DNA from: Ylistrum balloti
Lineage: Eukaryota
Reading direction: 5' to 3'
DNA: 64,000 nucleotides
Assembly: GCF_031769215.1 (NCBI RefSeq)
Contig: NW_026782015.1
Span: 1,116,001 to 1,180,000 of the forward strand
Under the pieces are notes generated by a model that was not told the origin of the DNA, searched no databases, and saw nothing but the letters and a program-made list of their open reading frames with translations. A program made the position numbers and the translations under genes. Position 1 is the first letter of the stretch, and every line of letters begins with the position of its first letter. Shown here one piece after another: positions 1,521 to 63,074 of this stretch.

Positions 1521-2515
1521 TTAAAGGCCATGTTATCAAGACTGATCTTGACAGGCCATGTTAAAGATTATGAAACGAAAGAAGTTCAAAAATTTAGACC
1601 ATGTTCTATCATTCTAACCAGTATATACTGCAGACACTGAACCATTAAAAATATTTAAAGATTCAAACAAAACAATTAAAAAATAATGAATCTCTGATTT
1701 GATAGATAAAGGAGTGCTTTAGTGAAATGGGGAGACAATGAAACATTAATTTCTAAGTTGCTTGTGACCCGTTTGTAAATAGAATAGGTGCAATAGTTGG
1801 ACACAGTGTAGATGAATTGGCAAAATGTATATAAGATATTATGTGGGTTATTACAACAGGGAAAGTACAACTTTCTGGATAAGGTGCCATACAACAGCTA
1901 CAAACATATGTGGAAAAAAACAACATCTGACCTAACATCAGAGCATGCTCACACAGAAATAACAGTGTCTTGTGTTCATCTTCATTCTGTTACTTAATCA
2001 AAGTGAGAGACCAGGTACATCATTAACTTACATGTAACATCTAAACAAAGTATTGCACAAATCATTTGATTTTGAAAATTCTAAATACAGAATTCAGGAG
2101 ACCATTTTTGTAAGAAACCTCCCAATACCTCACTGTTTACTTAGCATTCTCATCTGTTTATATTACAATATGTAAAAATGCATACAAAATAAATCATGGC
2201 ATTCTCAACAAAATCTCAAAAATCACTGCTTTAAACGGATTTACTATCATGTGGAATATTTTTCTGTTTTTACCAGACAATATACTCTGTTTTTACCAGA
2301 CAATATAATCTGTTTTACCCAATAATATACTCTTGTTTTTACCAGAAAATATACTGTCCTCTCCACCAAACAATATATTTACTTTGTTTTTACCAAGTAA
2401 TATTATGCCAGACCAGACACAACACAGTCACTTTGTTTTTGTTATGGTTTTACACCACACTACCAAGTTCGTTATCACCTTTAATATTTAAAACACGAAT
2501 GGACTTGGGTCAGTC

Positions 2516-30089: not shown

Positions 30090-31269
30090 GTTCAGCTCAT
30101 CAATACCGTGCGTGTCCACAATTGGAATCGATGCATGCTCTCAACGGCGCCCATTGATGCAACAAGTGTGCTGAAAAATGCCTGGGGAATACTATTCTAT
30201 ATTTTTACAAGCGAACGTGGCAGGTCAGGTAACGTCAACGGCTGATTTTGGATGCAACGTAAACGACGCTGCATCTTATCCCACACGTGTTTTGCATGCG
30301 ACATATCCGGTGACATTGCAGGTCCAGACAGCACATTCACATTATTCTCGATCAAGTCAGTGACAGCCCGCGCGATGTGTGGGCGAGCGTTATCCTGTTG
30401 AGGCGTGGCGTTACGTTGCTGCACAAATGGAAGGACGTGAGGTTAGATGATTTCGTCACGGTATCGGATGCTTGTAAGTGTGCCAACCACAACCACAAGA
30501 GCTGTTCTACCATGAAATGAGATGACATTCACACCATGACACTACCTCCGCCGAATAGACATCGTTGAATCACACAACTCGCATGGAAACGTTCACCAAC
30601 ACGACACTCTAGAACGACCGTTGCTGCTGTCAAGAATAAACCTGGACTCATCCGTGAAAAGAACACGTGCCCAGTCCTGTCGCGTGATGTGTATGTGTCC
30701 TCTACACCAGGCTAAACGTGCGACATGATGACGTTGCTAGAAAACATGACGTGTGGCTGGACGCCGTTGGTGTATGCCTCGTTCAGGCAATCAATTGCGT
30801 ACCATTCGGGGACTAGTTCTTCTAAGGCCAGGAATACTTCTAGTCGTCAAAGAAGCAGTTCTGAGTTGCTCACGGAGATGAACGACCAGGATACACGTAT
30901 CATAGCGATAAGACGTTGCGCGTGGACGTCCTGGCCGTGGCCGGCCTCTGTTGGGCCCAAACTGTTGGTACCGTCTCCAAAAGGCGTCTGCAGTATTTCG
31001 GTACACAGCAAATTGTCTGCCAACGTCAGTATGGCGTACACCAGCTTCGATCATGGCTACGGCACGTCATCTGTCAGTTTCACTCAACCTTGGCGTATCA
31101 AAGACGTTTTTCAAAATTATTCAGGTTTTGCGTGTTACATGTATTTACATTATGCTTTTACTTAGGTTTAGGGCAACAAACCTGACTGCTGGAAGAAAAA
31201 GAACGTGTATACGATGACGACGTGGGCAAGACAAACAAACTACCCGTGCAACTTATTCGCTGACCAGTG
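30090..31269 (-). mobile_element. Decayed Tc1/mariner DNA transposon
   Basis: Fragments (M)PRLSETDR*RAVAMIEAG..GRPR, LFTDESRF, QQDNARPH..PAMSPD..HVWD with stops and frameshifts. Candidate TIR CACTGGTCAGCGAATAAG.. next to TA at 31270-31271; the other TIR was not found. Confidence 0.88.
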
Positions 31270-31499: not shown

Positions 31500-32560
31500 C
31501 TAATCCCTTGTCATGATACAGTGTCTCGGCTCAGGATTCAGATGTTTTAAAGTGTGACATAGCAGGATGTCATGATACCCTGCCTACGCATATTATTTGA
31601 ACGTTCTATAGCATAACAGGACAGTATGTCATTAAACCGTGTCTCGGCATATTATTTGGACCTTCTACTGTGTAACTGGACGGGATGTCACCATACCATG
31701 TCCAGGCCCAGGATTCGGACGTTCTATAGCGTAATTGGACGGGACTCGCATATCGAACGCCCGATTCCTGTGGTCCAAGTTATGACATTTCAGTGTGATT
31801 ATACTATTGTACTGATAAATTATCTCGGACGATTCCGTGTCGTGATATTTTATGTCAAGACCAGTTTTCTTGGTCAATTAAGGTTAAGTAAACATAGATG
31901 TCATTGTACCTCAGTAACACGTGTCATACACAAATAGTTACATTTTATATTAAACAATATTCCAATAAAATACTGCTTATTCACTTATAGTTTTCTCATC
32001 TAGTTCATACAAACGACCTGAATAGATGTCTACAGCAAGCTTACTTGTTCGCTAATGTGACCGACTAACACACAGTGTTACCTATGTTAGCACCTCACAT
32101 ACAAGGCTACTTGTGTTAGCACCTCCCACACAAGGCTACTTGTGTCATCACCTCACGCACAAGGCTACATATGTGACCGACTAACACACCAGGCTACTTT
32201 TGTCAGCACTCACACACAAGACTAATGATGCGAGTACTAGTCTACTATCAATCCATGATTTTATTTCGTCATGTTCGTTGACCGATAGACTATTAGCCCA
32301 CGACCAAGACAGAATATATCAGAATCTTCCCACTTATGTGAGCACCTAACACACGGGGCTACTATTGTGATTAAAGTACCTAACGCACGGGGCTACTGAT
32401 GTTATTACCTATATTGTAACACAGAGGCTACTAATAATTGCACAGAACACACATGGCTGCAGATGTGAAAGCCGAACACACCAGCCGTGTACCTAAACAT
32501 GAGCATACTGCTGAGAGTACCTCTTACACGAGGCTGCTGATTTGAGCATCTAATACAACT
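31500..32560. repeat. Two degenerate tandem repeat patches (31500-31860 and 32080-32560)
   Basis: Recurrent GGACGTTCTATAGC and CACACAAGGCTACTTGTG..AGCACC motifs. Confidence 0.6.
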
Positions 32561-32853
32561 GATGAGTACCAAACACAGGAAGCTGCAAATATACGAGACT
32601 TCCGAGAACCCAACAGACTACTGATATAACAGATGACCTAGTTATGTCCCCTGATGGTTCTTTATTCTCTGATTAAGAAATGATGGTTATACTCAATAAC
32701 AAATTCTGTAGTCTGATGAAAAAGATAACACAGTTCTTCATAGCACGATTAAGTAATGACAGATTATTCTTCCTTTCTTTAGTACGTCCCCCAACACACT
32801 TTGCACTTCTTTAAAAAGATAAAGGCAACACAGTGACATCCCCTGACAGATTC

Positions 32854-32859
32854 TTTATT
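32854..32859 (-). terminator. Polyadenylation signal (AATAAA) of RPS18
   Basis: TTTATT on + strand ~22 nt past the RPS18 stop. Confidence 0.65.
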
Positions 32860-32880
32860 AGTTTTAAGTAATCACATAAT

Positions 32881-35800
32881 TTACTTCTTCTTGGCCACTC
32901 CAACAGTTCTTCCTCTCCTGCCAGTTGTCTTGGTGTGCTGTCCACGCACCCTCAGACTGGAAAAAAATGAAAACACTAAATTAGCCACTTTCTACATAAA
33001 GACAAAATTTTACAAACTTATATCAATCTTTACCAGCCAAGGTCAAAGATACTCTATTTAACCACTGTCAGTTACATTTTATGGTTGATAATATTAATGT
33101 CTGATCTTACCCCCAGTAGTGTCGGAGACCTCTGTGTGCCCTAATCTTCTTTAGTCTTTCAAGATCCTCACGGAGCTTGTTATCAAGGGCATTGGACATG
33201 ACCTGGCTGTATTTACCATCTTTGACATCCTTCTGTCTGTTCAGGAACCAGTTAGGGATTTTGTACTGGCGGGGATTGGACATAATTGTGATCACTCTCT
33301 CAATCTGAAATGTAGAATTATTGATATTTTAACACATACAAACATGGTCAGTATTCTGATATTGAGAATAAATATTTCTACAAAGCTACAAATAAGTCAC
33401 AAACCAAACTTTTAACCGGAATGAACTTGGGTTACAATGATCTATCCTCTAGGTTGGTCTGCTTCAATCCCATTGACTTTACCCATCGCTAGGTATATAC
33501 ATTTTTATTCAAAATATTATCAAAACTCGCAATGGTTATCACTTCACAAAATAAATCATAATCATATAAATTCTCCCATACTTAAAACACTTGTCCTGAC
33601 CAAATGTGGTTTTACTAACTCGCCTCCTAATTTCTTTACAAACCAGTCCTTGAAGGGCTAAAAGGTTGAAATTCATCTGAAGACATACACTGTATACTTG
33701 TACTAAGCCGAAGGGGCCAACAGTTGATCTTCCAATCAAGAGGGTGAGTTTATTACAAGACAATAAGAGGAGTGACAATCTACAATTATTTTCAGAAGTC
33801 CCTGTAAACATAATTGCTGAAAGCAGTGGGTCTCTCAATGTAAAAATTCAGTATTTTCAGAATTCTTTGAGTTCGCTCAACATTCTATGACTAAAGGACA
33901 AAGAACTCTTATGCATATTTATCACAAGACAATAAGCCAAGATGGCCAACACACTGTAATAGTATTGGTGTCTTTCAACAGTTAAATTCAATGTTGGGTT
34001 TATCATGAAACATGGGTTTACTATTGGGAAAACTATGGTACTTTGAATACTTCTTTATTGTATATATTCACATTAGCTTTGTTATTCCCAAGGAAAAAAT
34101 TCATATTTGGAGATTGTAATGGACCCAAAAAGCATTAAAACTTTTAAAACATAATATAAAGGGTCTAGTTAAAATATAATGCATGATGACACAAAAGTTC
34201 AAATCCTGGTAGAGTAAATAACATTGTTCTCATTCGTTGTCTCCAAAAGTTACTTTCTTTTTTAGTTTTTACTGTGACATATGATTCATCCCACTAATTG
34301 AATTGCTTACTTCTAAGGGACCTTCTTCCAGGTTCTGCTGTTTTTATATTTTTATCAATTGTACAAAGTACCAGTGTTCAGTGAGGAACAGAAATATTAT
34401 GCACAAAAAAACCCAATGTCAAGTGTACATGGACACTGCATGCATATGAAAGGGACAGACAAGCCAGTAAAATATTAGTTTTAAATCCTATATCAATCAA
34501 AATCGTCTACAAAGAAAGCACAAATACATTTCTTTACTGTCAATTCATAGCAGAATCAATTTCTTATGCTGTCTCCTGTCTTGTGATTGGCAGATAAGAA
34601 GGCTCTGATTTAAATTAATTCCCAACCTAAATAATGTTTGTTTTCATATCATGGGCTTAATCTTTATTGTAACTCATATCTTGTACATTAATATTTTCTC
34701 CGTTAAATATTTTTGTTCACACAACAGCAGAAAAACTTATTGTTATTTACATTTTTTCAATATTCATCATTAAGATTTGTCTGTTTTGAATCATCAGATT
34801 CATTCTCTAAGAAAAGATATCAGGGACTCCAGGGCCATAATTTTGTGCATTCTGCCATATTGTCCTGTCTTGTAGAATTAACTTCAAACCAAAACAATGC
34901 TAGTTTACAACTGATGTGAATCTCAATCTGAATAGTGTCAGAAACATCTAGCCTGACAGTTTTGATAAGATTTTAGTATAATACTTGCTGGTCTCATGAC
35001 CATATGCATGTATAACACTATTTTGAAAGATGGTGACATTATCTATAGCATACAACTTCCACTAGGTGGCATGGATACTTCATTGGAAACTGATTACTCA
35101 AATAAAGTGTATTTCCAGACCTGATATGATCCATCAACCATTACATCACGAAAAAAAATCTTAAAGCAGCAGTTCATTACCTCTTCTTCGCTCAGTTCTC
35201 CAGCACGTTTTGTGATGTCAACATCAGCCTTCTTGCAAACAACATTGGCATACCGCCGACCCATTCCCTACAAGTTAGAAATTCAGAAATTATTACAACA
35301 CAACCAGAAGTAATTTTATGACTAAGGCTTATTTGATTCCTTTTATATTTGCCAAAAAAAAAAATCAATGACAATACAAACAATAAAGGTATAATTTCTG
35401 TTCAATAAAGTTTTTAAATGTTATTTAAAAACAACCTTTTTAGTTGCAAAAACATGGATGAAGTTGATGAATATTCTATTTTGATTTTTCATTTGATTAA
35501 CTGATTAACTCAACTATCTTTCAAATGCAGGACTATCACCCATATTCAGGGTTTTGCCAAATCTGTTATATTGTTACATTCTCCTGAATATAATACAAAC
35601 CTTGATGGCTGTCAAGGCAAACATAATCTTCCTTTTTCCATCAATGTTCGTGTTCATAACACGAAGAATGTGTTGGAACTTCTCAGGGATGATGAGAGCC
35701 TACAACCAAGTAAATAAAAAAACATACATATACAAGCACTGAAAACATGCAGCATCATGTCGAAATTAAATTGTAAATGTGTGTTAACATTCTGTGACCA

Positions 35801-36430
35801 ATATTATTCCTTTAATCAATTTGTCAATTACGTAGTGAAATTCCATACCCTTTTTCACATAGTTGGTAGACTGTCCGATGATATCATGAAGGACATACAA
35901 AAACGATGCAATAGTTACTGAAATTCAAACTTGTATTCTAAAATCAAAGATATCCATCAGCAGGCACTTAGCTCGATGATGAAAAACGAGTATAACATAT
36001 ATCATTTATTTATATAATTATTTTTCATCAGCGAGCCAAGTGCTTGTGATCCTTATATACAGTATATTTCTATAGCTAATGTACACGAAGGAATGAAAAT
36101 ATTATTCCTACCAATATAATACTACATATCATAATTAGCCCAGAATTTTTTTTCAACACACTTAGATGAATATTCAAGCCTGTCATAAACACAGACCGAA
36201 ATCTGTGATACTAAATTGGATCCCTTGTAGTCATGATAATACGGTTCGACACGTTCGTTCGATCAAAAAATTATCTATGAAAACAAGAACATGTTATCGA
36301 AAATGTTATGGATCTTAATAAACCATACATGCTTTCACTTTTTATTAATTTGATAGAGCTAATAGCTTCATATTTCAACGTGATGGGAGCAGATTAATGT
36401 GCTAAACCCTTAGCAGTAAACACTAACCAT
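32881..36430 (-). CDS. RPS18: 40S ribosomal protein S18 (uS13), 152 aa. Exons: 36428-36430 (ATG only), 35601-35699, 35181-35267, 33111-33304, 32881-32956
   Basis: Spliced translation [122 protein letters not shown]; 459 nt total, all GT-AG. Confidence 0.99.
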
Positions 36431-36546
36431 GATGGCGGATTACCGGAAAAGGAAGTCAAGATAGTGAAAATGCTTGATCTGAAAAATGTTTGCATTGGTC
36501 GAATTCGTGATGTATACATCAGACTGATCCAGATGAAGTTGGTGAC
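36431..36546. promoter_or_regulatory. Bidirectional promoter region shared by RPS18 and VPS52
   Basis: 116 bp between divergent ATGs. Contains GATGGCGG (YY1-like), CCGGAA/GGAAGT (ETS-like), ATTGG (CCAAT reverse) and the 14-bp palindrome TGATGTATACATCA. Confidence 0.75.
36445..36455 (-). promoter_or_regulatory. 5'TOP/TCT pyrimidine tract of RPS18 (CTTCCTTTTCC)
   Basis: Pyrimidine tract 14 nt upstream of the RPS18 ATG, as typical of ribosomal-protein transcription starts. Confidence 0.75.
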
Positions 36547-39500
36547 ATGGCGTCAACTGCTGCGGAGCAAAATAAGGTAAGAACACCAACTCATTCTTTT
36601 GCATACTCTTATGTAGGAAATTTTCACATGTTGTAGCATTTACCCAATAAGAATCAATACATGAGCTTCAGTACAGGTACTAAGTAACAGAGTAACATGT
36701 ATATGTTCAGGTCCCGATAATGACGTTCAGAGAAGTCTAATGTAAACATAGCAAGACAAGTGCTGTACTGTATATATATTGGTTTCTTGATCGATAGGAT
36801 TAAACACACTTGCATTCAAACCCAAATCCTTAAATCCATGTTTGTACAAGGCAAACTAATGACGTAAAAAGAGCAGATCGGCGTGTCTTGTATTTCAAAG
36901 TGTTCAAGTAAAATGTTCGGTACAACCATTGATGTGAGTAATAGTTATGCATTCGAGGGATAGTTACCGCTTTGAGTAATCAATTAGTTCCGCATATACA
37001 GTGTCATTGGAAATAGAAACACATAAAGTCCTTGTAAACATTTGCAACAAAAAGGTGTCATATCTTTTCAAAACAATAAGCAATGCAATCTTGTACATTA
37101 ATAATAATATACATTGTCACATTTGCAGTTTGATGATGTTAAAGATATGACACCTTTTTAGTTGCACTTCTTTTAAAACAAACTTTATATATTTCTTTTT
37201 GAGAATAATCCTGTATTTAAATAACTAACTGATTACTAAGCCGATGGAGCATGTTGGTAGAAACAGCCGATAGTAGATTGACCTGGGTTTGATTACTGGT
37301 TGGGGCATTTCATAGGAATGTGTGTTTTCCTTGTTCTTTCACGATGATAATTCATGTAAAAATACTTTTAACTGAAGTTAGTACAAATATTGAAAATAAG
37401 CCCACTACCCCAATGCAATATAATGTACATTGTAAGAATCATTGTGTTGAATAGAGATACAATATAACACAGCCAATCCAAAGTGTAAACATTGGTCTGC
37501 CAATCAATGTTTAATGTTAATAGGACTGCAGAACACAATTCTCTTACTGTGATATTGTTTTATGCATATATACTATAGGACCTTGCTGACAATCTTCAGT
37601 TAAATCTTGGTGAGCTGGACTTAACTTCAGAAGATTTTTGGCTGGAGGAAGCTGATGGTGAGTATCAGTGAAATGGTTGACTGGAGATAACGAATGGTGA
37701 GTATCACTAAAATGGTTGACTGGAGATAACGAATGGTGAGTATCAGTGAAATGTTTGGTAGGAGGAAACTGACAGTGATTACCATTAAAATGGTTGATTA
37801 GTGGAACCTAATGTTGAATGATAGTAAAATGGTTGACTGGAAGAAGCTGATAGTGAATACCAGTAGAATTAGATGACTACCAGTAAATGTTGCTTGGCTG
37901 TAGGATTATTCGTAGGTGGTATAATTCCTTGGTTGCAGGATTGGAAGGTAATTTTCAGAATGTTGGATGGTGTGTAATTACTTGACTGTAGAAATATTTG
38001 ATTTCAGGAAACTGACTGGGTATAACAAATTTTTGGAGAAAAGTTTTATGACAATATTTGAGGTGGATCACTGGCCTCTGACTCTGAATAGTAGAAGGGT
38101 TTTAAATACTTTTGAATTCTCTGGATGTAATGTTTATCGAAATACATGTAGCTCCTCTAAGTCTTTGTGACATTTCATTCTCAGCCTGGGAGACAAACAA
38201 TTCAATACATCTACACAAGGAATTACAGGTAGACAAATAGAAGAATTAAGATACTGGAAAATAGTGGCGGTGTATTCCCTTCACAACTCTTTGTAAAGAG
38301 ATATAAAGAGTTGGTCAGTTTGAATTGGTGTTATAAATGATTAAATAACTGATTTGATTCTATTTTCAGTACATATTCAACAGAATTTGGAAGATGACAT
38401 TGTTAAAGAAGCCCTCAACACTGTAAGTTAATCATCAGTCTTGGATCGCCTTCAGTGAAACTCTCCTAAGATTCACACACATGAAATCAATAGATTTCTT
38501 CTACTTCAAATTGTAGCCTGACAGGCCACTCAAAATGTTACCTTTGCAGGCTGAACTAAAATTTTCTAGAACTACAATATCTGGTTTTGAGGATGATATA
38601 AGAAGTAAGGTTTGTTTAAACTTATAAAGTGATATTTTCTTAGGGATCGGATGGTATAATATGTTTTAAATTTATGTGATATATAATATGTAATACATAT
38701 TTGTCATCATCAGACCATATCAGGGATACATAGCTGTATTTTGTGTTATAATCTGAGCAGGTGAAAGGCATACAAATTTGGAATATTGACAAAGGGAGAC
38801 AATTCTTACATGTTTTTATTTAAGTTGAGGACAATTAGTTGCATTTTGACCTATTCCTTTTCCAAGTCGAAATTGTATGTTATATTGCACATTTTTCCCA
38901 TTTTGATAAAGCAAAAGTTAATTCAGCTTTCATAAATAATGTAGAATCAATGCATTGTTCCCCTTACATTTCAATACTTTCATACAATTGGTACAAGAAT
39001 ATTTTTGGAGAAGTGTATAAAATTGACCTTAAGTCTAATTCTTGTGTGGATTAAGATAGGTGCATGTAGACATTGAAGAAGTTTTTCTTCTAATGTGATT
39101 TAGGGGGTTGACTTGAGGCAGTATTCCAAACAAGTGGAGAAAGAACTACTGGATGTGGAGAATGCCTCCATACAGGACTGTATCCTTGTCAGACTGTTTA
39201 ACATTGGAGAAATTTTAATTTACATCAGAGTAACTTGATTCATATTAAATTAGCTGATACATATAAGATTAAATTGATTCCCTTTTCTGTGATACTTTAA
39301 AGTAACATTTACAGAGGATTTTTTTATCCTCTCAAATGAATCTTAATCCATTTCCCTGATTTACTGTCTACAAGGAAATATTTTCTAAAGTCTCTTGTTT
39401 TTTGCCTTTTGCCCACAGGACAAAAATAGTTGAAATTTAACTCTGGTAAAAAGATGGAGGAAAAACCATGGCAAGTCGATTTTTCCCATATATAGTATTT

Positions 39501-42500
39501 GCCCCATATAAAAGTTCACCAAGTCACCTGATGATCAGCTCAAGTCTAAATGACTTGGTTGTTGTCAGATTGATTTAGTTCTCTACAGACTGACTCGGTT
39601 CCTATCGGACTAACTTTTTACTCACAAAGCTGACTTGTCTAAAGTCCGACTTTATTTTTATAAGCCTCTCACTTGATTTCCGTAAGGTTAACATAGCTGC
39701 TATTAGAATGAGTTGCTACCCATAATTTGAAGTATCACAATGTTTTGCTCACATACTTATTAAGACTGATGTGATTCCTTAAGTGGTACAGACATCAAGG
39801 AAAGCCAGAACATTGCCAGTCTGCACAAACAGATTGCTTCCTGTGACACTATTTTAGAGGTGAGTTGACTACAGTTACAGAGGGTGATGTCATTTACAGG
39901 TCAATAAAAACATGAAATACAGGTAGATCAGATAGAATAGATTAAAAAGATTTACAGCTAAAGTGAAACTTATAGCAAACTGACATTGTGTACAACAAAA
40001 TTAAGATAAGGTTTTGTCGTGATTAGATACAAAAATTCTTCAGTTGTTCAGAATGTGTTCTGTATAAATTGTTCACTATATTAACACAAACATGAAGCAT
40101 GAGGGTAAGGGTATACTCCTTAGTAAGTGTATCTTCTGTGTTAATTGACAAATAAACAACGGTTTGCATTGGTAACCAGTTTAGAGACTTGAGGAACATA
40201 TTAAAATATTGAACATAAACTACACAGTATACATCAGAAATACTTTTGGTTTTGAATGATTTTATGTTCTATGGTATGGAGTTGTGTGACAGACAGAGGT
40301 TCACTAACCTTGCTAGGATGTACTATGATGTAGAGGTGTATGACAGGCAGATGTTCACTAACCTTGCTAGGATGTACTATGATGTAGAGGTGTATGACAG
40401 GCAGATGTTCACTAACCTTGCTAGGATGTACTATGATGTAGAGGTGTATGACAGACAGATGTTCACTAACCTTGCTAGGATGTACTTATGTAGAATGACA
40501 AAATATTATTTATGAGGATGTATGACAGGCAGATGTTTTTGGGAAACCCTCCTGAATGTACCTCATGCAATGTTTAGTTATTGATGTAGAGGTGTTCACT
40601 GTTCACTAACCTTGCTAGGATGTACTATGATGTAGAGGTGTATGACAGACAGAGGTTCACTAACCATGCTAGGATGTACTATGATGTAGAGGTGTATGAC
40701 AGACAGAGGTTCACTAACCATGCTAGGATGTACTATGATGTAGAGGTGTATGACAGGCAGATGTTCACTAACCTTGCTAGGATGTACTATGATGTAGAGG
40801 TGTATGACAGACAGAGGTTCACTAACCATATTAGGATGTACTATGATGTAGAGGTGTATGACAGGCAGATGTTCACTAACATTGATAGGATGTACTATGA
40901 TGTAGAGGTGTATGACAGACAGAGGTTCACTAACCTTGCTAGGATGTACTATGATGTAGAGGTGTTGACAAAACAGAGGTTCACTAAATGCTATTTATTT
41001 AGAATGTAGGTTCCTTTTTCTAGTGTAGAGGTGTATGACAACAGAGGTTCACTAATTTGCTAGGATGTACTATGATGTAGAGGTGCTTTAGAAGTATCAG
41101 TAATTTTGTGATAGTTTTAGAACTTTTATAACATGTGCCCCATTTGTGGTCTTTTTATGTGAGTCCAGGTGATATTGGGAAGGTTTTGACTTATAATTCT
41201 TTTTTGTGATGGCAGAGAATGGAACAGATGCTGAATGGCTTCCAGGGATGGAGGTAGCAGCATGACAGCAGAGTTCACTAACCTTGCTAGGATGTCTATG
41301 ATGTAGACAATGACAGTCAGATGTTCAAACTTAAACACCACACATGTACTATGATGTAGAGGTAATGACAGGTCACAGGGTCACTAACCTTGATAGGATG
41401 TACATGATGTAGAGGTGTATGTACAGATGTTCACTCACAGGATGGGTACAGATAATACAGGTCACAGGGTGGGTAGATAATACAGGTCACACCATGGGTA
41501 CAGATGTTCACAGACCTTGCTAGGGTGTACTATGATAATACCGGTCACAGGGTGGGTACAGATAATACAGGTCACAGGGTGGGTACAGATAATACAGGTC
41601 ACAGGGTGGGTACAGATAATACAGGTCACAGGGTGGGTAAAGATAATACAGGTCACAGGGTGGGTACAGATAATACAGGTCACAGGGTGGGTACAGATAA
41701 CACAGGTCACAGGGTGGGTACAGATAATACAGGTCACAGGGTGAGTAGTGATAATAGAGGTCACAGGGTGGGTACAGATAATACAGGTCACAGGGTGGGT
41801 ACAGATAATACAGGTCACAGGGTGGGTACAGATAATACAGGTCACAGGGTGGGTACAGATAATACAGGTCACAGGGTGGGTAAAGATAATACAGGTGACA
41901 GGGTGGGTACAGATAATACAGGTCACAGGGTGGGTAAAGATAATACATGTCACAGGGTGGTTACAGATAATACAGATGACAGGGTGGGTACAGATAATAC
42001 AGGTGACAGGGTGGGTACAGATAATACAGGTCACAGGGTGGGTACAGATAATAAAGGTCACAGGGTGGGTACAGATAATACAGGTCACAGGGTGGGTAAA
42101 GATAATACAGGTGACAGGGTGGGTACAGATAATACAGGTCACAGGGTGGGTAAAGATAATACAGGTGACAGGGTGGGTATAGATAATACAGGTCACAGGG
42201 TGGGTACAGATAATACAGGTCACACCATGGGTACAGATAATACAGGTCACAGGGTGGGTACAGATAATACAGGTCACAGGGTGGGTACAGATAATACAGG
42301 TCACAGGGTGAGTAGTGATAATAGAGGTCACAAGGTGGGTACAGATAATACAGGTCACAGGGTGGGTACAGATAATACAGGTCACAGGGTGGGTGCAGAT
42401 AATACAGGTCACAGGGTGGGTGCAGATAATACAGGTCACAGGGTGGATAAAGATAAAACAGGTCACAGGGTGGGTACAGATAATACAGGTCACAGGGTGG

Positions 42501-45500
42501 GTAAAGATAATACAGGTCACCGGATGGGCACAGATAATACAGGTCACTAGGTGGGTAGGATAATTCAGGTCACAGGGTGGGTACAGACAGGTAAACATCA
42601 CACATATAATAGTATCACATACATAGATAATACAGGTCACAGGGTGGGTACAGATAATACATGTCACAGAGTGGGTACAGATAATACAGGTCACAGGGTA
42701 AGTACAGATAATACAGGTCACAGGGGAAGTACAGATAATACAGGTCACAGGGTGGGTACAGATAATACAGGTCACAATGTGGGTACAGGTAATACAGGTC
42801 ACAGGGTGAGTACAGATAATACAGGTCACAGGGTGAGTACAGATAATACAGATCACAGGGTGAGTACAGATAATACAGATCACAGGGTGAGTACAGATAA
42901 TACAGGTCACAGGGTGGGTACAGATAATACAGGTCACAGGGTGGGTACAGATAATACAGATCACAGGGTGAGTACAGATAATACAGATCACATGGTGAGT
43001 ACAGATAATACAGGTCACAGGGTGGGTACAGATAATACAGGTCACAGGGTGGGTACAGATAATACAGGTCACAGGGTGGGTACAGATAATACAGATCACA
43101 GGGTGAGTACAGATAATACAGATCACAGGGTGAGTAATACAGATCACATACACAAATAATACAGGTCACAGGGTGGGTACAGATAATACAGGTCACAGGG
43201 TGGGTACAGATAATACAGGTCACAGGGTGGGTACAGATAATACAGGTCACAGGGTGGGTACAGATAATACAGGTCACAGGGTGGGTACAGATAATACAGG
43301 TCACAGGGTGGGTACAGATAATACAGGTCACAGGGTGGGTAGAGACAGGTAAACACCACACATACAATTGTACCATAGAGATCTATGACAGATCAGTGGC
43401 CAGTTCAGAGTTGTGTGGTTCCATGCAATCAAATAATCTTAACTTATTATATTACAGGCTGTGAGAGGAGAGCTGAGTCAGTTTGTTGATGAGATGGTTA
43501 TACCAGAGACAATGATCAAGTAAGTTACATTATAATACAGCATGGAATTTTTCCAAACCAACCATGCATGGGACATGAATATTGGTCAGTTAAGGGAGGG
43601 TTCGGTTTGCAGAAGTGAACCAAGTTGATCTGTCCGGACTTGGAGAGGATTAAACCAGTTTCATTCTGTACATTACATTCTGTTTGCTTTTGGCCTTCAC
43701 ATTGCACATGTCCAACTGAATGCAGCTATAAAAATGCTATTTAGGGTAAAAAGTGTTTCATGTAATATTATATTAACTGGATGTGATATTATATTAACTA
43801 AGTGTAATATTATATTAACTGGATGTGATATCATATTAACTAAGTGTAATATTACATTGACGAGGTGTGGTATATTTACTAGGCTTGATATGTTATTGAC
43901 TGGTTGTGATATTTTCCAGTCACATCCTCGACACACCAGTAACAGAGAGAGAATTCCTTGAACATCTCCATGAGTTAAACCACAAAATTAACTTTGTCAA
44001 GGAGCAGTCTTTCCGAGATGCCAAGTCTTGTTACGATGTCCGTGATATTCTAGAAAAATTGAAAATAAAGGTAAATTATGATTATATTGTATTGTAGTAA
44101 AACATTTTATTGTTTCTAGTGTATTATAGTGAAGAATCATATTGTTTCTAGAATATTGGATTTTTTTTATTCCATTGTAAGAAATACAATAATACAGACT
44201 AATTACAGAATGTTTACTAATTACAGGGTGTATAATACAAATGATAGACTTTTTACAAATTACAACCTTATTACAAAAAATTCTACTATTTACAGAATAG
44301 TTACAGACACTGATAAAAATTACAGACTGTTTGCTATTTACAACCTAATTACAGACTCTCTACTAATTACTGTTGTTCTCTTTACAGGCTATAGCCAAAA
44401 TCAGAGAATTCCTAATGCAGAAGATATACTCCTTCCGCAAGCCTATGAGCAACTATACAATACCACAAAATGCAATGCTGAAATTTAGGTAGGATTTCAT
44501 TTAGAAAGACTTGTAATGCTTATATTTTTAAGCCAATCTGTGTTATTGCAGAAAACAATGAAGGGTGGTCATGGTTAAGCTTATACTAGTATGCCTGTTG
44601 AAGACTTAGATAATTTCTGCCATGGTGTGTGTATATATACAAGAAAGTTAAAAAAAAAAATTAAAAGAAAATACATGTATTTCATTTTATGAAAGGTAGT
44701 AGGTGAAATCTCTTGTTTTTGTCCTAAACCTCTACTGGGTAAATTTCAACAGTTTTCTCTGTTACTGGCATTAACAGAATTTGTATTTTTTCATTTGAAG
44801 AATAGCTGATGTTAAATGTTTTCAGCATTATTCATATAAGTCTCATTATTTTTAAAATCTTCCTTCACAAGGAATAGTTAATTTTTATTTGAACATGTTC
44901 AAAGAAATTTGAAACATCAAATCTATGGTTAAGTGTATTCACAGTGAGTGTATAATACTTCACAGGTTTTTCAATGAATTCTTGATGGCCAATGAAAGAC
45001 ATGTTGCTAAGGAAGTTAGAGACGAATACATTGATACCATGGGGAAGATGTACTACTCTTATTTTAAGGGTTACCTGAGCAGACTGATGAAATTACAGGT
45101 AATAACTAAAGGTAGAAACAGGTTGATACAAATGTGAGTGAAGAAAAATGTTAAAGATATAGATAAGACATGAAGAATATGTGAAGGGAGTTACACCTAA
45201 AAAATTCAGAGAAGATGTGGGAACAAAGTGTGGGGAAATAAAGTAAAACATTGAAGGAAGGTATTGGGAGACACATGTAAAGTTTTGAGTGAAGGTAGGG
45301 AGATATGGGTAAAGAACTGAGGGGAGATGTGGGGAAAAGGGTGGGGAAATACAGGTATGCATTTAAAGAAAGTGTTGGAAGATAATGCAAAGTTTTGAGG
45401 GAAGGTGTGGGAGATATGGGTAAAGAACTGAGGGATGGTGTGGGGAGATACAGATAAAGAATTGAGGGGAGTTGTGGGAAGATACAAGTAAAGTATTGAA

Positions 45501-48500
45501 GGAATGGTTGGAGAAATAAAGATTAGGTACTAAGGACAAGTGTGGAGAGATACAAACAATGAAGAAAATCACTATTTTGATAATAATAGATTTTAATTAT
45601 TAGGGATAAAATGCATATTTATCCAAAGGCTTCACTTTCAAATTGGCCTAGGTAACTAGACAACTTTTTATTTGCAGTTCGAAGAAGTAGCAGAGCGAGA
45701 GGACTTGATGGGGGTAGAAGACACTGCCAGAAGAAATATTCTTTTTTGGATACAGCGCTACTATCTCCATTGAGATTTCTTTTTTTGTATTTTTTTCATC
45801 CCATCAAAACTAAGGCTTGCTGTATGTTTGACATAAATTGGTCAGTTGCTTTTATGATTAAAAACTTACAGTTTTGCAGTATAAATGTAAGTACACATGG
45901 AGAAAGGAATAGAGTAAAAATGCAGTAGTAACTCACAATCAAAATTTGGTAGGATTACAAATCAGGGGAGATAACTTGTAGTGGCATATTCTTGTGTTGA
46001 CACTATTTGCTCAGTTTTTTCAGCTTTATATCACAAGGTCAATCACTATTGTAAATATTATTAAGAAGAAAAATTGACATGCAATATTTTGTTTATATTT
46101 CTCCCTAACTTTTCTGAAGCTTCTTCTCCACGAAACCAACATTAAAAAATAGGTCAACAGTGTTTACTCTCGGTAACCGTGGTAATATCCTTGGATCAGA
46201 TCTGGAGGGTCCCATCATCGTCCCTCATGCAGCTCAAAAGTCTGACACCAAGGTATGGTTTTAGCCTCTAAAACAGCATTTATTATAATTACAAAATATG
46301 TTTGGCCCAAATTTAATGAAAAACAGAGAATGACTTGTTCACTGTAATAATAATGACACAATTACTTTTTGCAATATCAGTAACTTTACATTGACAAATG
46401 ATGTGATTCCAGCAGAATGACCTGCACTACAACTTTGAGTGTCTGATTATATTGCAGTACAACTTTGTTTGTCTGATTATATCGCAGTACAACTTTGTTT
46501 GTCTGATTATATCGCAGTACAACTTTGTGTGTCTGATTATATTGCAGTATAACTTTGTGTGTCTGATTATATTGCAGTACAACTTTGTGTGTCTGATTAT
46601 ATAGTAGTACAACTTTGAGTGTCTGATTATATTGCAGTACAACTTTGTGTGTCTAATTATATTGCAGTACAACTTTGTGTGTCTGATTATATTGCAGTAT
46701 AACTTTGTGTGTCTAATTATATTGCAGTACAACTTTGTGTGTCTGATTATATAGTAGTACAACTTTGTGTGTCTAATTATATTGCAGTACAACTTTGTGT
46801 GTCTGATTATATTGCAGTACAACTTTGAGTGTCTGTTCCGTAGTATCCACTTCGCCCTGATGGACAACTGTTGTCGAGAATACCTGTTCCTTGTTGATTT
46901 CTACATGGCATCTGGTTCCGCCTCTATAGACCTATTTAATGCTATCATTGGCAAAACCCTCACACTCTACCTGGTAAGTTCCCTGCCTGGTAACCAAGTC
47001 TCACACTCTACCTGGTAAGTTCCCTGCCTGGTAACCAAATTTCACACTCTATCTGGTCAGTTCCCTGCCTGGTAACCAAAATCTCACACTCTACCTGGTA
47101 AGGTCCCTGTCTGGTAACCAAAATCTCACACTCTACCTGGTAAGTTCCCTGTCTGGTAACCAAAATCCCCTGTGAAATGCATTTGCAAGGGATATTAAGT
47201 TCGGCTCTGTATGTCCGTCCATTTGTGGGCTTTTCCAGGCTATAACTCCAAAACCATTCAACTCGACTTCACAAAGCTTGCTGAATATATTATTTGCCCT
47301 ACTTGTGCCTTTTGCTATTGACAGCATTCTATTTGTTGTATTTTTTGTGTTACCATGGAAACATAGACAAAAAACACTAAATTTCTGGTTACTTTCCATG
47401 TTACAACTTCTAAACCATTCCACTCCACAAAACTTTCTGTATATATTATTATTATTTTGCACTAGCGATTTTACAAATTGTTATATATAAATATCATTTT
47501 TGGTTTTACACCAACAGCTCCTTGTCTGATTTGAGTACCCGTAATGGAGTTGGGAGATCAATAGTTTGCTCATATGACTTCTGTGTAAGATTTTGATGGT
47601 TTTATCTTTACACAGAAACAAATGGAGGAGTACATCAATGACTGCTATGATTCTATCGCCATTTTTCTCTCCATTCACATCGTATATCGCTTCCATTCCA
47701 TCATGCAGAAGAGATCAGTGCCAGCTCTAGACAGGTATATGTAAATGAATTGACTGTTCTGTAGTTTCACAATCAAGTCTTAGTCTGTAATCACCTGCTG
47801 TACAATATCACAATAAAAATACAACAAAGTTTGGAAATTATGATGATTTTTGAAGTGTTTTTGTATGACTTTTGAAATGTTTTAGGTACTGGGACGCACT
47901 ACAACAAATGATGTGGCCAAGATTTGAATACATCCTCGACCTTAACATACAGAGTGTCCGTGACTGTGACCCACAGAAGTTTGGCCACATTGACAACCGG
48001 CCACATTATGTAAGTTACATCAGACAACAAAACAAGCTTCATATGTTTGATGTCTGTTAACAAGGGATCAAACATATTACATAAAACAAATATTTATTTC
48101 CATCAGTTTTTTTTAATTCATGTTGATCAGTTGTATTCCTGAGAAAAATAAAAGTTGTGGAGTTTGCAGCTGCAGGTCTAAAGTTTGTAGAACTGTATTT
48201 TTATTCATCATTTTTATTTCAATAGATTACACGACGTTATGCTGAGTTCTCAGCAGCTATTGTGGGAATCAACCAATCATTTCCCAACGAGAGAGTCCAG
48301 CGCATCCTGGAGCAGCTGCAGACAGAAGTGGAAAATTTCATTCTAAAGATGGCTGCTGAGTTTCCACACCGCAAAGAACAGCTGATCTTCCTAATCAACA
48401 ACTATGACATGATGTTGGGGGTCATTATGGTAGGTCATAGTTATCAGAGCAATGACACAATGTTGGAGGCTATACCAGACCAACGTATCACAGGTGTGAC

Positions 48501-50217
48501 ACAGTGACAGGGGATATAATAGGTCAACTTTGACACAGTGTTAGGGGCTATACCACATCAACGTATCATAGATGTGACACAGTGACAGGGGATATAATAG
48601 GTCAGGGTATTGCTGCTGTATCACAGCTGTGACACCATGTTTGAGCTACTTTAGGTCAAGGTATCAAGACAGTGACATAGTGTAAGAGGCTATAACAGGT
48701 CAACAAATCACAGATATGACACAGTGCTAGGAAACATTTTGGTCAAAGTCGTTACAGCAGTAACATAATGTCATGGGGTCAGTAGATTTAAAAAGTCACA
48801 TATTTTTCATTGATCACACAGTATTTTCTTGTTTTGTATGAAATTCAAACTGAGGGATATTCACACATCCATGGACACATTCTGACATGACATCATGTTA
48901 ATGGTTATGTACACATTGTAACTAAAGTTTGTCTTTTTTTAAGGAGAGAACGACAGAAGATTCCAAAGAATCTGAAAGTTTTAAGGAATTGCTAACTGCA
49001 CGCACAACAGAGTTCATTGAGGAGGTTCTTTCCCCTCACTTCGGGGGTCTCATTAGCTTTGTAAAGGACTGTGAGGTGATGTTGGAACGTGGTCACACTG
49101 ATAGTCTCAAACACGAGGAGAGTAAGTAGTGAATTTCATGTTATAAAAGTACTAGGCAAGTGTAAAGGAAAGGTGACTTAATTCAGGATTTCCATTGGTA
49201 ACTCTTGACCACAATTCAATTTTGTTGCATTCATAGATGATACAAGTCTTGTTTACAGAACTCCATGTCATAAAAATAAGTTAGTGAAATCCTGGTGCTA
49301 TGGGTGCCAAGGGTCATGCTAATTTATTGCTGTCACTACATGGCGCAGCAATCTTATTAATGGATGCATTCATGTGTTGTCAGGCCAATACTGGTATGTT
49401 TGTATCTGTGATATGTATGTCACAGGGTTGGTAATGATGTGTTTGTAGTTGTGATATGTATGTTATAGGGTTGGTAATGATGTGTTTGTAGTTGTGATAC
49501 CTATGTTACAGGACGGGTACAGCAGATAGTGAGAGGCTTCAACAATGACTGGAAACGGGCCCTAGAAGTGATCAATGGTGATGTAATGAGAGCATTTACA
49601 AACTTCAAAAATGGAACACAGATACTACAGGTGAATGATAATTGATGTAATTCATATATCAGTTATAGTAATACATCTTTTATTGGAGTTACAAAGTCTT
49701 TTGTAGTCTATATATCACATATAGCTATATCTAGGTTACAAAGCCTCTTGTTGTCCATATATTAAGTACAGCAATATCTAGGTTACAAAGACTCTTGTTG
49801 TCCACATATCAAGTACAGAAATATCAGGGTTACAAAGCCTCTTGTTGATCAAGTACAGAAATATCTGGGTTACAAAGATTCTTTTTTAGGATGACTTCTG
49901 TTGTAATTTTCTATTATTATAGAGGATTATAGATGGGTTGCTGAACTGAATCAATGTGGCTTATGCTGACAAGTCTCACTGTCACATGGCAAATTGTACG
50001 CCATTGTGTGCATTGTATGACGATTGTCTACAGAGCCAGGAATAATGATAACATAATCTTGTTGTTGTAGGGAGCCCTGACCCAGCTGATTCAGTATTAC
50101 CATCGCTTCCAGAAAGTTCTCTCACAAGGACCCTTCCGTAATATGGCCATCAGGAACGAGCTCATCAACATTCACCATGTCATGGTGGAAGTAAAGAAAT
50201 ATAAACCAACATTTTAG
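36547..50217 (+). CDS. VPS52: Vacuolar protein sorting 52 (GARP/EARP subunit), ~700 aa, 19 exons: 36547-36576, 37579-37657, 38370-38422, 39104-39179, 39792-39859, 41216-~41340 (corrupted), 43458-43519, 43920-44070, 44388-44488, 44966-45098, 45678-45735, 46119-46252, 46818-46973, 47616-47734, 47886-48009, 48226-48429, 48944-49121, 49512-49630, 50071-50217
   Basis: Exon translations match VPS52 throughout: LGELDLTSEDF, VHIQQNLEDDIVKEAL, GVDLRQYSKQVE, IREFLMQKIYSFRKPM, FEEVAEREDLMGVEDTA, YWDALQQMMWPRFE, ITRRYAEFSAAIV, FLINNYDMMLGV, GALTQLIQYYHRF, ELINIHHVMVEVKKYKPTF*. Confidence 0.96.
37243..37310 (+). mobile_element. Degenerate tRNA-like SINE head
   Basis: A-box-like TGGAGCATGTTGGTAG and B-box-like GGTTTGATTAC; no full cloverleaf. 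Confidence 0.3.
40270..41430. repeat. 54-bp minisatellite around VPS52 exon 6
   Basis: GATGTAGAGGTGTATGACAGGCAGATGTTCACTAACCTTGCTAGGATGTACTAT units. Confidence 0.95.
41430..43350. repeat. 27-bp G-rich minisatellite, ~1.9 kb
   Basis: ACAGGTCACAGGGTGGGTACAGATAAT about 70 copies. Confidence 0.98.
43740..43915. repeat. 21/42-bp tandem repeat abutting the VPS52 exon-8 acceptor
   Basis: TGT(A/G)ATATTATATTAACT units. Confidence 0.8.
45130..45560. repeat. Purine-rich degenerate tandem repeat
   Basis: GTGTGGGGAGATACAGGTAAAGAATTGAG-like units. Confidence 0.7.
46425..47163. repeat. 30-bp acceptor-derived array (46425-46830) and 41-42-bp donor-derived array (46958-47163) bracketing VPS52 exon 13
   Basis: Units contain the exact junction sequences ATTGCAG|TACAACTTTG and CTCTACCTG|GTAAGTTCC. 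Confidence 0.95.
49720..49880. repeat. ~47-bp tandem repeat
   Basis: TTACAAAGCCTCTTGTTGTCC..AAGTACAG..ATATCTAGG about 4 copies. Confidence 0.8.
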
Positions 50218-53257: not shown

Positions 53258-53265
53258 TGACGTCA
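53258..53265. promoter_or_regulatory. Perfect CRE palindrome TGACGTCA upstream of DDAH ATG
   Basis: Exact motif 31 nt upstream of the ATG, in a CpG-richer patch; function not shown. Confidence 0.35.
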
Positions 53266-53296
53266 TAACTCATCAAAGCTTCATTTCCTGTTCAAC

Positions 53297-62191: not shown

Positions 62192-63074
62192 GTGAGTATT
62201 TGCACTGACCCTGTACACGGTAACCTTACAGTACAACACTGCTAAAAACGCCAATATATTCTTTACAACTAAAACATGATACACCAACAACATAGACAGC
62301 TGTTCACTGGCAGCATTCAATTTGATTGACAGTATTCTTCTACTCTATTTTATCTTGATGAAAATAACTGTTTAAATCAATTTTATTCCCTCTATGACTT
62401 CACATGGCTGTGTTTTTGTCCTGTCTGTTTGTCTGGAAACTAAAACACACCTGTAAAACTAAAACACACCTGTCAGTGGGTGTTTTCGCTGAGCCAATCA
62501 GGCAATAAGTAGTAAGAGTTTTTTACGGTAAACATTGACAATTAATGTGCACATGACATGACAGGTGGGCGGAGCTTGTTACAGATGCTTACAAATTGCA
62601 GACAACACTTTTTCTTAACTATATCATTCTTTGGTTACACTTTGCATTCAATTTCATTTCCATCATAGCTTATGCTTTACAAATATAATCTATTTTAAGT
62701 TTTAAAAAAATCACCAAAGTTTAATTTGGTATAATGATATAGCTTGGCTTTTAGAGATTTATTTTTTAGGTTTATCTTCCCTGTCGACAGCCAGACTACA
62801 TAATCTGACTTTTGTCTGTCCCTAAAAATTTGAGAATAAGAATAGATCTAGAGATTTGGGCGGATGAGAAGAGAAAAACTTTATTCTTGATAATACAGCT
62901 GAATCAAGTTAAAATAGAAATATGTATATCGGATAGGTTTTGCATAATTACCCGTAATTTATATGTATGGAAGAATAAATAACATGTACAACAAAAAGAA
63001 AGAAATGGACAATATTGTATTATGTGCTGTCAATTTTCATGAAAACACAACTGTATAGATTAATTACATTTGAA

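What the first reader, a model, noticed from the sequence alone, without database searches (positions are those of the whole stretch)
36426..36576. RPS18-VPS52 head-to-head pair with only 116 bp between start codons, same arrangement as in human
Seen: RPS18 ATG at 36430 (minus), TOP tract at 36445-36455, VPS52 ATG at 36547 (plus). At most ~90 bp is left for both core promoters plus the VPS52 5'UTR. Established: human VPS52 and RPS18 are immediately head-to-head in the extended MHC class II region. Inference: a bidirectional promoter retained since the bilaterian ancestor, coupling a highly expressed TOP mRNA to a trafficking gene.
Basis: partly seen in the sequence, partly recalled or inferred. 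Interest (0 to 1): 0.7.

Follow-up and report, generated by a model that had tools for sequence, protein, structure and literature searches.

The report
Ancient back-to-back RPS18 and VPS52 genes
In this scallop a ribosomal-protein gene (RPS18) and a vesicle-trafficking gene (VPS52) start 116 bases apart on opposite strands; molluscs, a starfish, an acorn worm and vertebrates share this layout but the corals, sea anemone and sponges sampled do not, so it is a real and very old example of an already known kind of gene pairing.

Summary
RPS18 lies on the minus strand (five coding exons; ATG 36430-36428 followed at once by an intron). VPS52 lies on the plus strand (36547-50217). Both were identified exon by exon with Pfam. 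The VPS52 start exon (MASTAAEQNK) has no RNA support here. It is, however, the best-scoring candidate, it is in frame with exon 2, and it matches the annotated Pecten maximus start (MASTADDREQSM). In P. maximus the ATG-to-ATG gap is also exactly 116 bp with no indel, and this is the only alignable non-coding DNA in 7.5 kb.

RPS18 sits head-to-head with VPS52 in all five other bilaterians whose locus could be fetched: Pecten, Mytilus, Octopus, Asterias and Glandiceps. The literature reports the same in human. The pair is absent within 10 kb in Porites, Nematostella, Sycon and Oscarella, and it is broken in C. elegans. Ancestry at least back to the protostome-deuterostome ancestor is therefore supported.

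The "TOP/ETS" block ACTTCCTTTTCCGGT is not specific to this pair. Six of its 10 exact copies in the genome lie at the 5' ends of ribosomal-protein genes. The palindrome and the CCAAT box are not conserved even between the two scallops. Shared promoter function and co-regulation remain inferred. This is a new member of a known kind, of modest interest.

The parts
36428..36451 (-). RPS18 exon 1. It comprises a predicted 21-nt 5'UTR plus the ATG (36430-36428), and the intron starts at 36427 (gttagt).
   Evidence: Sequence. The same 'ATG only, then intron' layout is seen in Pecten, Mytilus, Octopus and Asterias. The TSS is predicted from the motif and has not been mapped.
36442..36456 (-). The 15-mer ACTTCCTTTTCCGGT, which contains the TOP/TCT pyrimidine tract (36455-36445). 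It is a consensus initiator element of the ribosomal-protein gene class.
   Evidence: It is identical in 4 molluscs. It has 10 exact copies in the 648.5-Mb genome, and 6 of them lie at the 5' ends of RPS18, RPL11, RPS17, RPS2, RPS10 and RACK1.
36431..36546 (.). The 116-bp region between the two start codons, the presumed shared or abutting promoter region.
   Evidence: 87 of 116 positions are identical to Pecten maximus with no indel. The blastn match that contains it (36415-36604) is the only alignable non-coding DNA in 32500-40000 between the two scallops.
36415..36457 (.). A 43-bp block identical between the two scallops. It covers the 5' splice site of RPS18 intron 1, the ATG, the 5'UTR and the TCT tract.
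36541..36562 (+). A 22-bp block identical between the two scallops, spanning the VPS52 start codon (GGTGACATGGCGTCAACTGCTG).
36547..36576 (+). VPS52 first coding exon, MASTAAEQNK, ending in phase 0 with donor AAG|gtaaga.
   Evidence: It is the best of 28 candidate first coding exons that end in the frame required by exon 2 (donor 8/9, A at -3 and G at +4). It is in frame with exon 2. The P. maximus annotated protein starts MASTADDREQSM at the homologous place. No RNA evidence is available.
37579..37657 (+). VPS52 exon 2 (DLADNLQLNLGELDLTSEDFWLEEAD), with acceptor tatag| and donor G|gtgagt.
38370..38422 (+). VPS52 exon 3 (VHIQQNLEDDIVKEALNT).
39104..50217 (+). The rest of VPS52, from exon 4 (which starts at 39104) to the stop codon after ...EVKKYKPTF. 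The introns hold large minisatellites.
   Evidence: Pfam Vps52_CC and Vps52_C hit collinearly. tblastn with Pecten and Sycon VPS52 gives about 95% identity to Pecten.
32881..35699 (-). RPS18 exons 2-5 (35699-35601, 35267-35181, 33304-33111, 32956-32881 including the stop codon).
   Evidence: Pfam Ribosomal_S13 hits collinearly. Splice sites and the sum of 152 codons are.

Best explanation
This is the scallop copy of an ancient divergent gene pair. RPS18 (a TOP/TCT-type ribosomal-protein gene) and VPS52 (a GARP/EARP tethering-complex subunit) are transcribed away from each other out of one short region, with 116 bp between their start codons. RPS18 most likely initiates at the C of the conserved TCT initiator (about 36451). 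VPS52 most likely initiates on the other strand within, or overlapping, the next ~95 bp. The two core promoters therefore share one nucleosome-free region. Any breakpoint between the genes would damage at least one essential promoter, and this is why the arrangement has survived since at least the protostome-deuterostome ancestor. Shown here: the gene identities, the orientation, the spacing, the conservation of the intergenic DNA between scallops, and the phylogenetic distribution. Inferred: the two start sites, the sharing of promoter elements, and any co-regulation.
For: The VPS52 exon 1 is supported, and the P. maximus annotated CDS starts at the homologous ATG with the same 116-bp gap. 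A phylogenetic footprint is present: blastn aligns only the exons and 36415-36604 between the two scallops, apart from one weak 61-bp match at 39219-39279 (E=1e-4), and the rest of the introns do not align. The intergenic region is 75% identical with no indel and contains identical blocks of 43 bp and 22 bp. In the microsynteny survey, RPS18 lies on the opposite strand directly upstream of VPS52, with these ATG-to-ATG gaps: Pecten 116 bp, Asterias 167 bp, Glandiceps 361 bp, Mytilus 2027 bp, and Octopus overlapping by annotation or 49 bp to the second in-frame ATG. Human head-to-head orientation is stated in PMC2846915, and the human gene order RING1, VPS52, RPS18 is listed in PMC3608171. The TCT/TOP element is conserved across species and marks RP-gene 5' ends genome-wide, which supports the RPS18 TSS placement.
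Against: There is no transcript evidence for either TSS. The single public run that holds this DNA is a DNA run from an individual or relative 95-99% identical. Apart from the RP-class initiator, nothing in the intergenic region is visibly conserved beyond scallops. The central part of the spacer, including the palindrome and the ATTGG box, differs between the two scallops. In Mytilus the annotated start codons are 2 kb apart, so a tight spacing is not universal, unless Mytilus has an unannotated non-coding first exon. Co-expression was not tested. The gene ranges returned by the look-up tool are CDS ranges, not transcript ends.
Confidence: 0.7

Rival explanations
1. The two genes have independent core promoters that merely abut. 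The pair has survived because a 0.1-2 kb spacer is a tiny target for rearrangement and both genes are essential. There are no shared elements and no regulatory coupling.
For: The only deeply conserved element is the RP-class initiator, which belongs to RPS18 alone. The middle of the spacer is not conserved between scallops. The spacing ranges from about 50 bp to 2 kb among species.
Against: The spacer length is exactly preserved (116 bp, no indel) between two scallop species whose introns no longer align. With 95 bp or less between the predicted RPS18 +1 and the VPS52 ATG, two pre-initiation complexes can hardly be independent. The pair is kept in 3 invertebrate phyla plus vertebrates, whereas the genes next outward from the pair are not conserved.
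Confidence: 0.22
2. VPS52 does not start at 36547. Its real first exon or TSS lies elsewhere, for example at the ATG exon 36913-36933 or further away, so the 116-bp figure would be an artefact of reading an ORF.
For: No RNA data exist for this locus. Exon 1 codes only 10 poorly conserved residues. A second candidate exists, MFGTTID with donor score 7/9. The relative X1 carries G>T at 36576, the last base of the proposed exon.
Against: The exon at 36547 has the best donor and Kozak context. Its start MASTA and the 22 bp around the ATG are identical in P. maximus, where the deposited annotation starts the CDS at that very ATG. Nothing between 36605 and 37573, including the alternative candidate, aligns to P. 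maximus. Exon 2 has no ATG in frame, so the start must lie upstream of 37579, which is in any case at most 1.15 kb from RPS18.
Confidence: 0.06
3. The pairing arose independently in molluscs and deuterostomes (convergence) and was not inherited.
For: It is absent in four non-bilaterians and in C. elegans (different clones: F08C6.3 versus Y57G11C.16), so the pair can be unlinked.
Against: The same two genes, the same divergent orientation and immediate adjacency were found in 6 of 6 bilaterian loci obtained, spanning Mollusca, Echinodermata and Hemichordata, and in Chordata by the literature. By my rough estimate, the chance that two given genes become divergent immediate neighbours is of the order of 1 in 10^4 per lineage.
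Confidence: 0.02

Closest known systems
Human VPS52-RPS18 head-to-head pair in the extended MHC class II region (6p21.3)
   Same: The same two orthologous genes lie in the same divergent orientation as immediate neighbours (PMC2846915; gene order in PMC3608171).
   Different: The scallop locus has no CpG-island context (about 34% GC). The outer neighbours differ: a DDAH-like gene lies downstream of VPS52 and a Tc1/mariner remnant lies beyond RPS18, where human has RING1 and B3GALT4 (RING1; B3GALT4 from my own knowledge). I did not compare the DNA with human sequence.
Conserved ancestral microsyntenic pairs (CAMPs) in 5'-5' orientation, for example HSPD1-HSPE1 (Irimia et al. 2012, PMC3514665)
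   Same: These are non-paralogous neighbours kept together across phyla, mostly divergent, with short spacers taken as the signature of a bidirectional promoter.
   Different: RPS18-VPS52 is not named in the main text of that paper, and its supplementary lists are not held here, so I cannot say whether the pair is already listed. HSPD1-HSPE1 reaches back to unicellular holozoans and fungi, whereas this pair was not found in the cnidarians or sponges sampled.
TCT-initiator / 5'TOP ribosomal-protein gene promoters
   Same: A C(+1) lies inside a pyrimidine run, the 5'UTR is very short, and the first coding exon ends right after the ATG. The same 15-mer sits at the 5' end of RPL11, RPS17, RPS2, RPS10 and RACK1 in this genome.
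   Different: The scallop and mollusc consensus is longer than the published 8-nt TCT consensus. ACTTCCTTTTCCGGT is identical from bivalves to octopus at RPS18. The TSS has not been mapped here.

Membership tests
RPS18 / uS13 (Pfam Ribosomal_S13, PF00416) | A collinear match over the whole profile, with an intact spliced reading frame. | tested here: met
   Four exons hit profile positions 1-21, 22-53, 50-114 and 114-128. The exon lengths sum to 152 codons plus a stop, with canonical splice sites.
VPS52 (Pfam Vps52_CC PF04129 and Vps52_C PF20655) | Both domains present, in order, on one strand. | tested here: met
   Vps52_CC positions 3-24, 61-83, 84-134 and 133-167 are followed by Vps52_C positions 1-292, across exons from 39770 to 48429. 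Identity to Pecten maximus VPS52 is about 95%.
Head-to-head (bidirectional-promoter) gene pair | Divergent orientation with no gene in between. | tested here: met
   The RPS18 ATG is at 36430 (minus) and the VPS52 ATG at 36547 (plus). Only 116 bp lie between them.
Head-to-head (bidirectional-promoter) gene pair | Transcription start sites less than 1 kb apart. | tested here: inconclusive
   The start codons are 116 bp apart, and the conserved exon 2 at 37579 caps the distance at about 1.1 kb. No TSS data exist, however: the only run found is DNA.
Head-to-head (bidirectional-promoter) gene pair | Shared cis elements that drive both directions, or co-expression. | not testable with these tools
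   This needs reporter assays or expression data. Only sequence conservation of the spacer between two scallops is available.
Conserved ancestral microsyntenic pair | Adjacency kept in several phyla on both sides of the protostome-deuterostome split. | tested here: met
   Found in Mollusca (2 scallops, mussel, octopus), Echinodermata and Hemichordata, and in Chordata by the literature. Not found in 2 cnidarians or 2 sponges. Ecdysozoa and other spiralian phyla could not be sampled.
5'TOP / TCT-initiator mRNA gene | Transcription starts at a C followed by an uninterrupted run of 4-15 pyrimidines. | tested here: inconclusive
   The motif is present and fits YYC(+1)TTTYY. It is conserved across species and enriched at RP-gene 5' ends. 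The actual cap site has not been mapped.

The most novel reading that the evidence does not exclude
The RPS18-VPS52 divergent pair may be a linkage that was formed on the bilaterian stem, since it is absent from cnidarians and sponges. It would then have been held for more than 500 million years by interleaved promoters, with the VPS52 start region overlapping the RP-class initiator of RPS18. The 15-mer ACTTCCTTTTCCGGT, whose complement carries two GGAA cores, would serve both strands: as a TCT/TOP initiator for RPS18 and as an ETS-type activator site for VPS52. This would tie basal VPS52 transcription to the growth-regulated RP programme.
Probability: 0.2. Interest if true: 0.55.

Novelty: new member of a known kind. 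Interest (0 to 1): 0.35.

Why it matters
It adds a clean and easily testable case to the small set of non-paralogous gene pairs kept together across animal phyla, and it involves a gene pair that in vertebrates sits in the extended MHC. The distribution found here (present in all bilaterian loci obtained, absent in four non-bilaterians) gives a provisional date for the linkage. The very short spacer (116 bp in two scallops) makes a minimal dual-direction promoter that could be dissected in a reporter assay. A side result is a 15-nt consensus initiator for scallop ribosomal-protein genes, which is useful for annotating TSSs in mollusc genomes. None of this is surprising in kind, because conserved 5'-5' pairs and TCT/TOP promoters are well described.

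Tried and rejected
1. RNA evidence. When laid on 34000-39900, it gave contigs running evenly through introns and the spacer at 95-99% identity. It is therefore DNA of another individual or close relative and says nothing about TSSs or splicing.

2. Rfam at gathering thresholds over the whole window found nothing, so there is no recognisable snoRNA in the RPS18 introns.

3. Literature. No paper in the searchable library mentions RPS18-VPS52 linkage outside vertebrates. The supplementary pair lists of Irimia et al. 2012 are not held. Prior listing therefore cannot be excluded.

4. Look-ups for Lineus (nemertean), Priapulus and Homarus VPS52 found no record. This gives no data for Nemertea or Ecdysozoa. 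It is not evidence of absence.

5. The alternative VPS52 first exon at 36913-36933 was rejected as less likely. It has a weaker donor and no conservation with Pecten.

6. I rejected reading the GGAA cores and ATGGCGG as pair-specific ETS and YY1 sites. The GGAA cores belong to a 15-mer common to RP genes. ATGGCGG overlaps the RPS18 Kozak/ATG, and it is absent in Mytilus, Octopus and Asterias.

7. The octopus annotation, in which the VPS52 ATG overlaps the RPS18 ATG (CATG), is probably an over-extended ORF. The second in-frame ATG (MDTTAEDT...) fits other molluscs better. I do not use it as evidence for overlapping transcripts.

All searches used single exons by reference, or database proteins.
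Full report
WHAT IS THERE

The window has no N runs. It comes from a scallop genome (note s1-238029), and its VPS52 exons are about 95% identical to Pecten maximus VPS52.

On the minus strand an ATG lies at 36430-36428 and is followed at once by gttagt. Four further exons follow: 35699-35601, 35267-35181, 33304-33111 and 32956-32881. All have canonical splice sites, and with the ATG their lengths sum to 152 codons plus a stop. They hit Pfam Ribosomal_S13 collinearly over profile positions 1-128. This is RPS18.

It fits the TCT initiator consensus YYC(+1)TTTYY with +1 at 36451, which predicts a 21-nt 5'UTR. The consensus is from my own knowledge of Parry et al. 2010.

On the plus strand, exons from 39770 to 48429 hit Vps52_CC and then Vps52_C in order. 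tblastn with full-length VPS52 proteins lays out the gene from 37579 to the stop after 50214.

I built no joined protein, so the step of searching a spliced model was left out.

THE WEAK POINT: VPS52 EXON 1

The conserved exon 2 (tatag|GAC..., 37579-37657, DLADNLQLNLGELDLTSEDFWLEEAD) has no in-frame ATG, so the start codon must lie upstream. Between 36431 and 37578 there are 28 candidate first coding exons that begin at an ATG and end in the frame exon 2 requires. Among them, 36547-36576 (MASTAAEQNK, AAG|gtaaga, gacATGg) scores best.

No RNA data could be had. The one public run that holds this DNA is a DNA run 95-99% identical to the window.

Comparative evidence fills the gap. I used the large protein search once, with a single 68-residue VPS52 exon, because exon-sized queries cannot reach full-length proteins in the word search. 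Its best full-length hit, which proved to be Sycon ciliatum VPS52, then served as the word-search query and gave named VPS52 proteins from many animals. The P. maximus protein starts MASTADDREQSM|EVADTIQLNLGELDLTSEDFWLEEAD. In the P. maximus genome the deposited annotation starts the VPS52 CDS at an ATG that is again exactly 116 bp from the RPS18 ATG.

Between the two scallops, blastn aligns only the exons and the stretch 36415-36604. The introns do not align, apart from one weak 61-bp match at 39219-39279 (E=1e-4). The 116-bp spacer has 87 identical positions and no indel. An identical 43-bp block (36415-36457) spans the RPS18 5' end, and an identical 22-bp block (36541-36562) spans the VPS52 ATG. 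The alternative candidate exon at 36913 lies in unalignable DNA. I therefore accept 36547 as the VPS52 start codon with about 0.9 confidence.

HOW OLD IS THE PAIR

Using look-up of encoding contigs on named VPS52 proteins, I fetched the loci with 10-kb flanks. The gene ranges it returns are CDS ranges: in Pecten they begin exactly at the two ATGs.

In every bilaterian locus obtained, RPS18 lies directly upstream on the opposite strand. The ATG-to-ATG gaps are:
- Pecten maximus: 116 bp.
- Mytilus californianus: 2027 bp.
- Octopus sinensis: the annotated ATGs overlap as CATG, and the gap to the second in-frame ATG is 49 bp.
- Asterias rubens: 167 bp.
- Glandiceps talaboti: 361 bp.

tblastn with the window's four RPS18 exon peptides confirms this without relying on annotation. 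It finds no RPS18 anywhere in the loci of Porites lutea, Nematostella vectensis, Sycon ciliatum or Oscarella lobularis, whose upstream neighbours are unrelated genes.

Human head-to-head orientation is stated in PMC2846915, which also lists both genes among the genes of the salmon MHC class I regions. In C. elegans the two genes lie on different clones, vps-52 on F08C6.3 and rps-18 on Y57G11C.16, so the pair has been broken there. Look-ups for a nemertean, a priapulid and a lobster returned no record.

That test was therefore run and not met. Inheritance from at least the protostome-deuterostome ancestor is well supported. An origin on the bilaterian stem is suggested by four negative non-bilaterians, but it is not proven.

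WHAT THE MOTIFS ARE

An alignment of the RPS18 5' ends shows ACTTCCTTTTCCGGT identical in both scallops, the mussel and the octopus. Related forms occur in Glandiceps (CGCTCTTTTCCGGT) and Asterias (CTGTCTTTTCCAAT).

This 15-mer occurs exactly 10 times in the 648.5-Mb assembly, against about one expected by my rough composition-based estimate. Six of the ten copies lie, in the sense orientation, just upstream of ribosomal-protein genes:
- RPS18.
- RPL11 (Pfam Ribosomal_L5).
- RPS17 (Pfam S17e).
- RPS2 (Pfam Ribosomal_S5).
- RPS10 (Pfam S10_plectin).
- RACK1 (PDB match, E 5e-17).

The element is therefore the class-wide initiator of scallop RP genes. This strengthens the placement of the RPS18 TSS.

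The ATGGCGG ('YY1') motif overlaps the RPS18 Kozak/ATG. It is shared by the scallops and Glandiceps but not by Mytilus, Octopus or Asterias. The palindrome GATGTATACATC and the ATTGG box are not conserved even in P. maximus.

MECHANISM AND VERDICT

The most likely picture (0.7) is a single short promoter region. RPS18 fires from the TCT initiator, and VPS52 fires from the opposite strand within or overlapping the next ~95 bp. The arrangement is kept because any break would cripple one of two essential genes. The exact preservation of spacer length between two scallops, whose introns have otherwise diverged beyond alignment, argues for constraint on the spacer itself.

The main rival (0.22) is that two independent promoters simply abut and the pair persists because the spacer is a small target. 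Only TSS mapping and reporter dissection can separate the two.

Co-regulation ('coupling a TOP mRNA to a trafficking gene') is not shown. TOP control is translational and would not carry over to VPS52.

The finding is real and tidy, but it belongs to a well-known class: conserved 5'-5' microsyntenic pairs and TCT/TOP promoters (PMC3514665). I found no paper that names this pair outside vertebrates. Supplementary lists that I could not read may contain it. I rate it a new member of a known kind, interest 0.35.

Noticed in passing
G000-wide; loci L011, L012, L013, L014, L018; window 36442-36456: The 15-mer ACTTCCTTTTCCGGT is a consensus initiator of scallop ribosomal-protein genes. Six of its 10 exact genome copies lie at the 5' ends of RPS18, RPL11, RPS17, RPS2, RPS10 and RACK1. 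The one-mismatch variant ACTTCCGTTTCCGGT recurs at least 14 times among the listed hits and was not examined.
   Followed up: partly
window 37638-37869, 46423-46835, 46959-47167: Three minisatellites in VPS52 are seeded on splice junctions. A 39-bp unit repeats the exon 2 donor (ATGGTGAGTATCA). A 30-bp unit repeats an acceptor plus the exon start (YNFECL...). A 41-42-bp unit repeats an exon end plus the GTAAGT donor. Each creates a row of decoy splice sites next to the real one.
   Followed up: no
window 40264-40987 and 41435-43345: Large minisatellites lie in one VPS52 intron region: 54/108-bp units, and a 27-bp unit repeated about 70 times. A small coding exon (RMEQMLNGFQ, about 41213-41248) lies between them.
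   Followed up: no
window 30200-31066 (minus): A decayed Tc1/mariner-type transposase lies just beyond the 3' end of RPS18. It gives weak Pfam matches to HTH_28 and DDE_3, both below the gathering scores, and its frames are broken.
   Followed up: partly
window 53261-62242 (plus): A DDAH-like gene lies directly downstream of VPS52 (weak Pfam DDAH_eukar hit). It is the subject of another finding of this scan (s1-238029). From memory, human DDAH2 is also MHC-linked, so wider proto-MHC linkage might be worth checking.
   Followed up: no
L003 9990-10060 (Octopus sinensis): The annotated VPS52 start codon overlaps the RPS18 start codon on the other strand (CATG), and the annotated ORF reads through the RPS18 TOP block. 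This is probably an over-extended model. The second in-frame ATG (MDTTAEDT) is only 49 bp from the RPS18 ATG.
   Followed up: partly
L001 2673-9881 (Pecten maximus): RPS18 intron 1 is about 7.2 kb in P. maximus, against 0.73 kb in this scallop. It holds an annotated 119-residue gene with no Pfam hit, probably an insertion.
   Followed up: no
window 36576: The DNA run X1 (95-99% identical) reads T where the window has G, at the last base of VPS52 exon 1. The change is AAG to AAT (K to N), and it removes the G at donor position -1.
   Followed up: no
window 2500-12750 (minus): Serine-rich long ORF pieces, and a piece reading ...NVASRECGAKIISSNPEVENPAGVLTSNKDDYMINPC..., suggest a large gene on the minus strand. 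From memory it resembles SUN-domain SUCO/SLP1 proteins, but there was no Pfam hit at E<0.1.
   Followed up: partly
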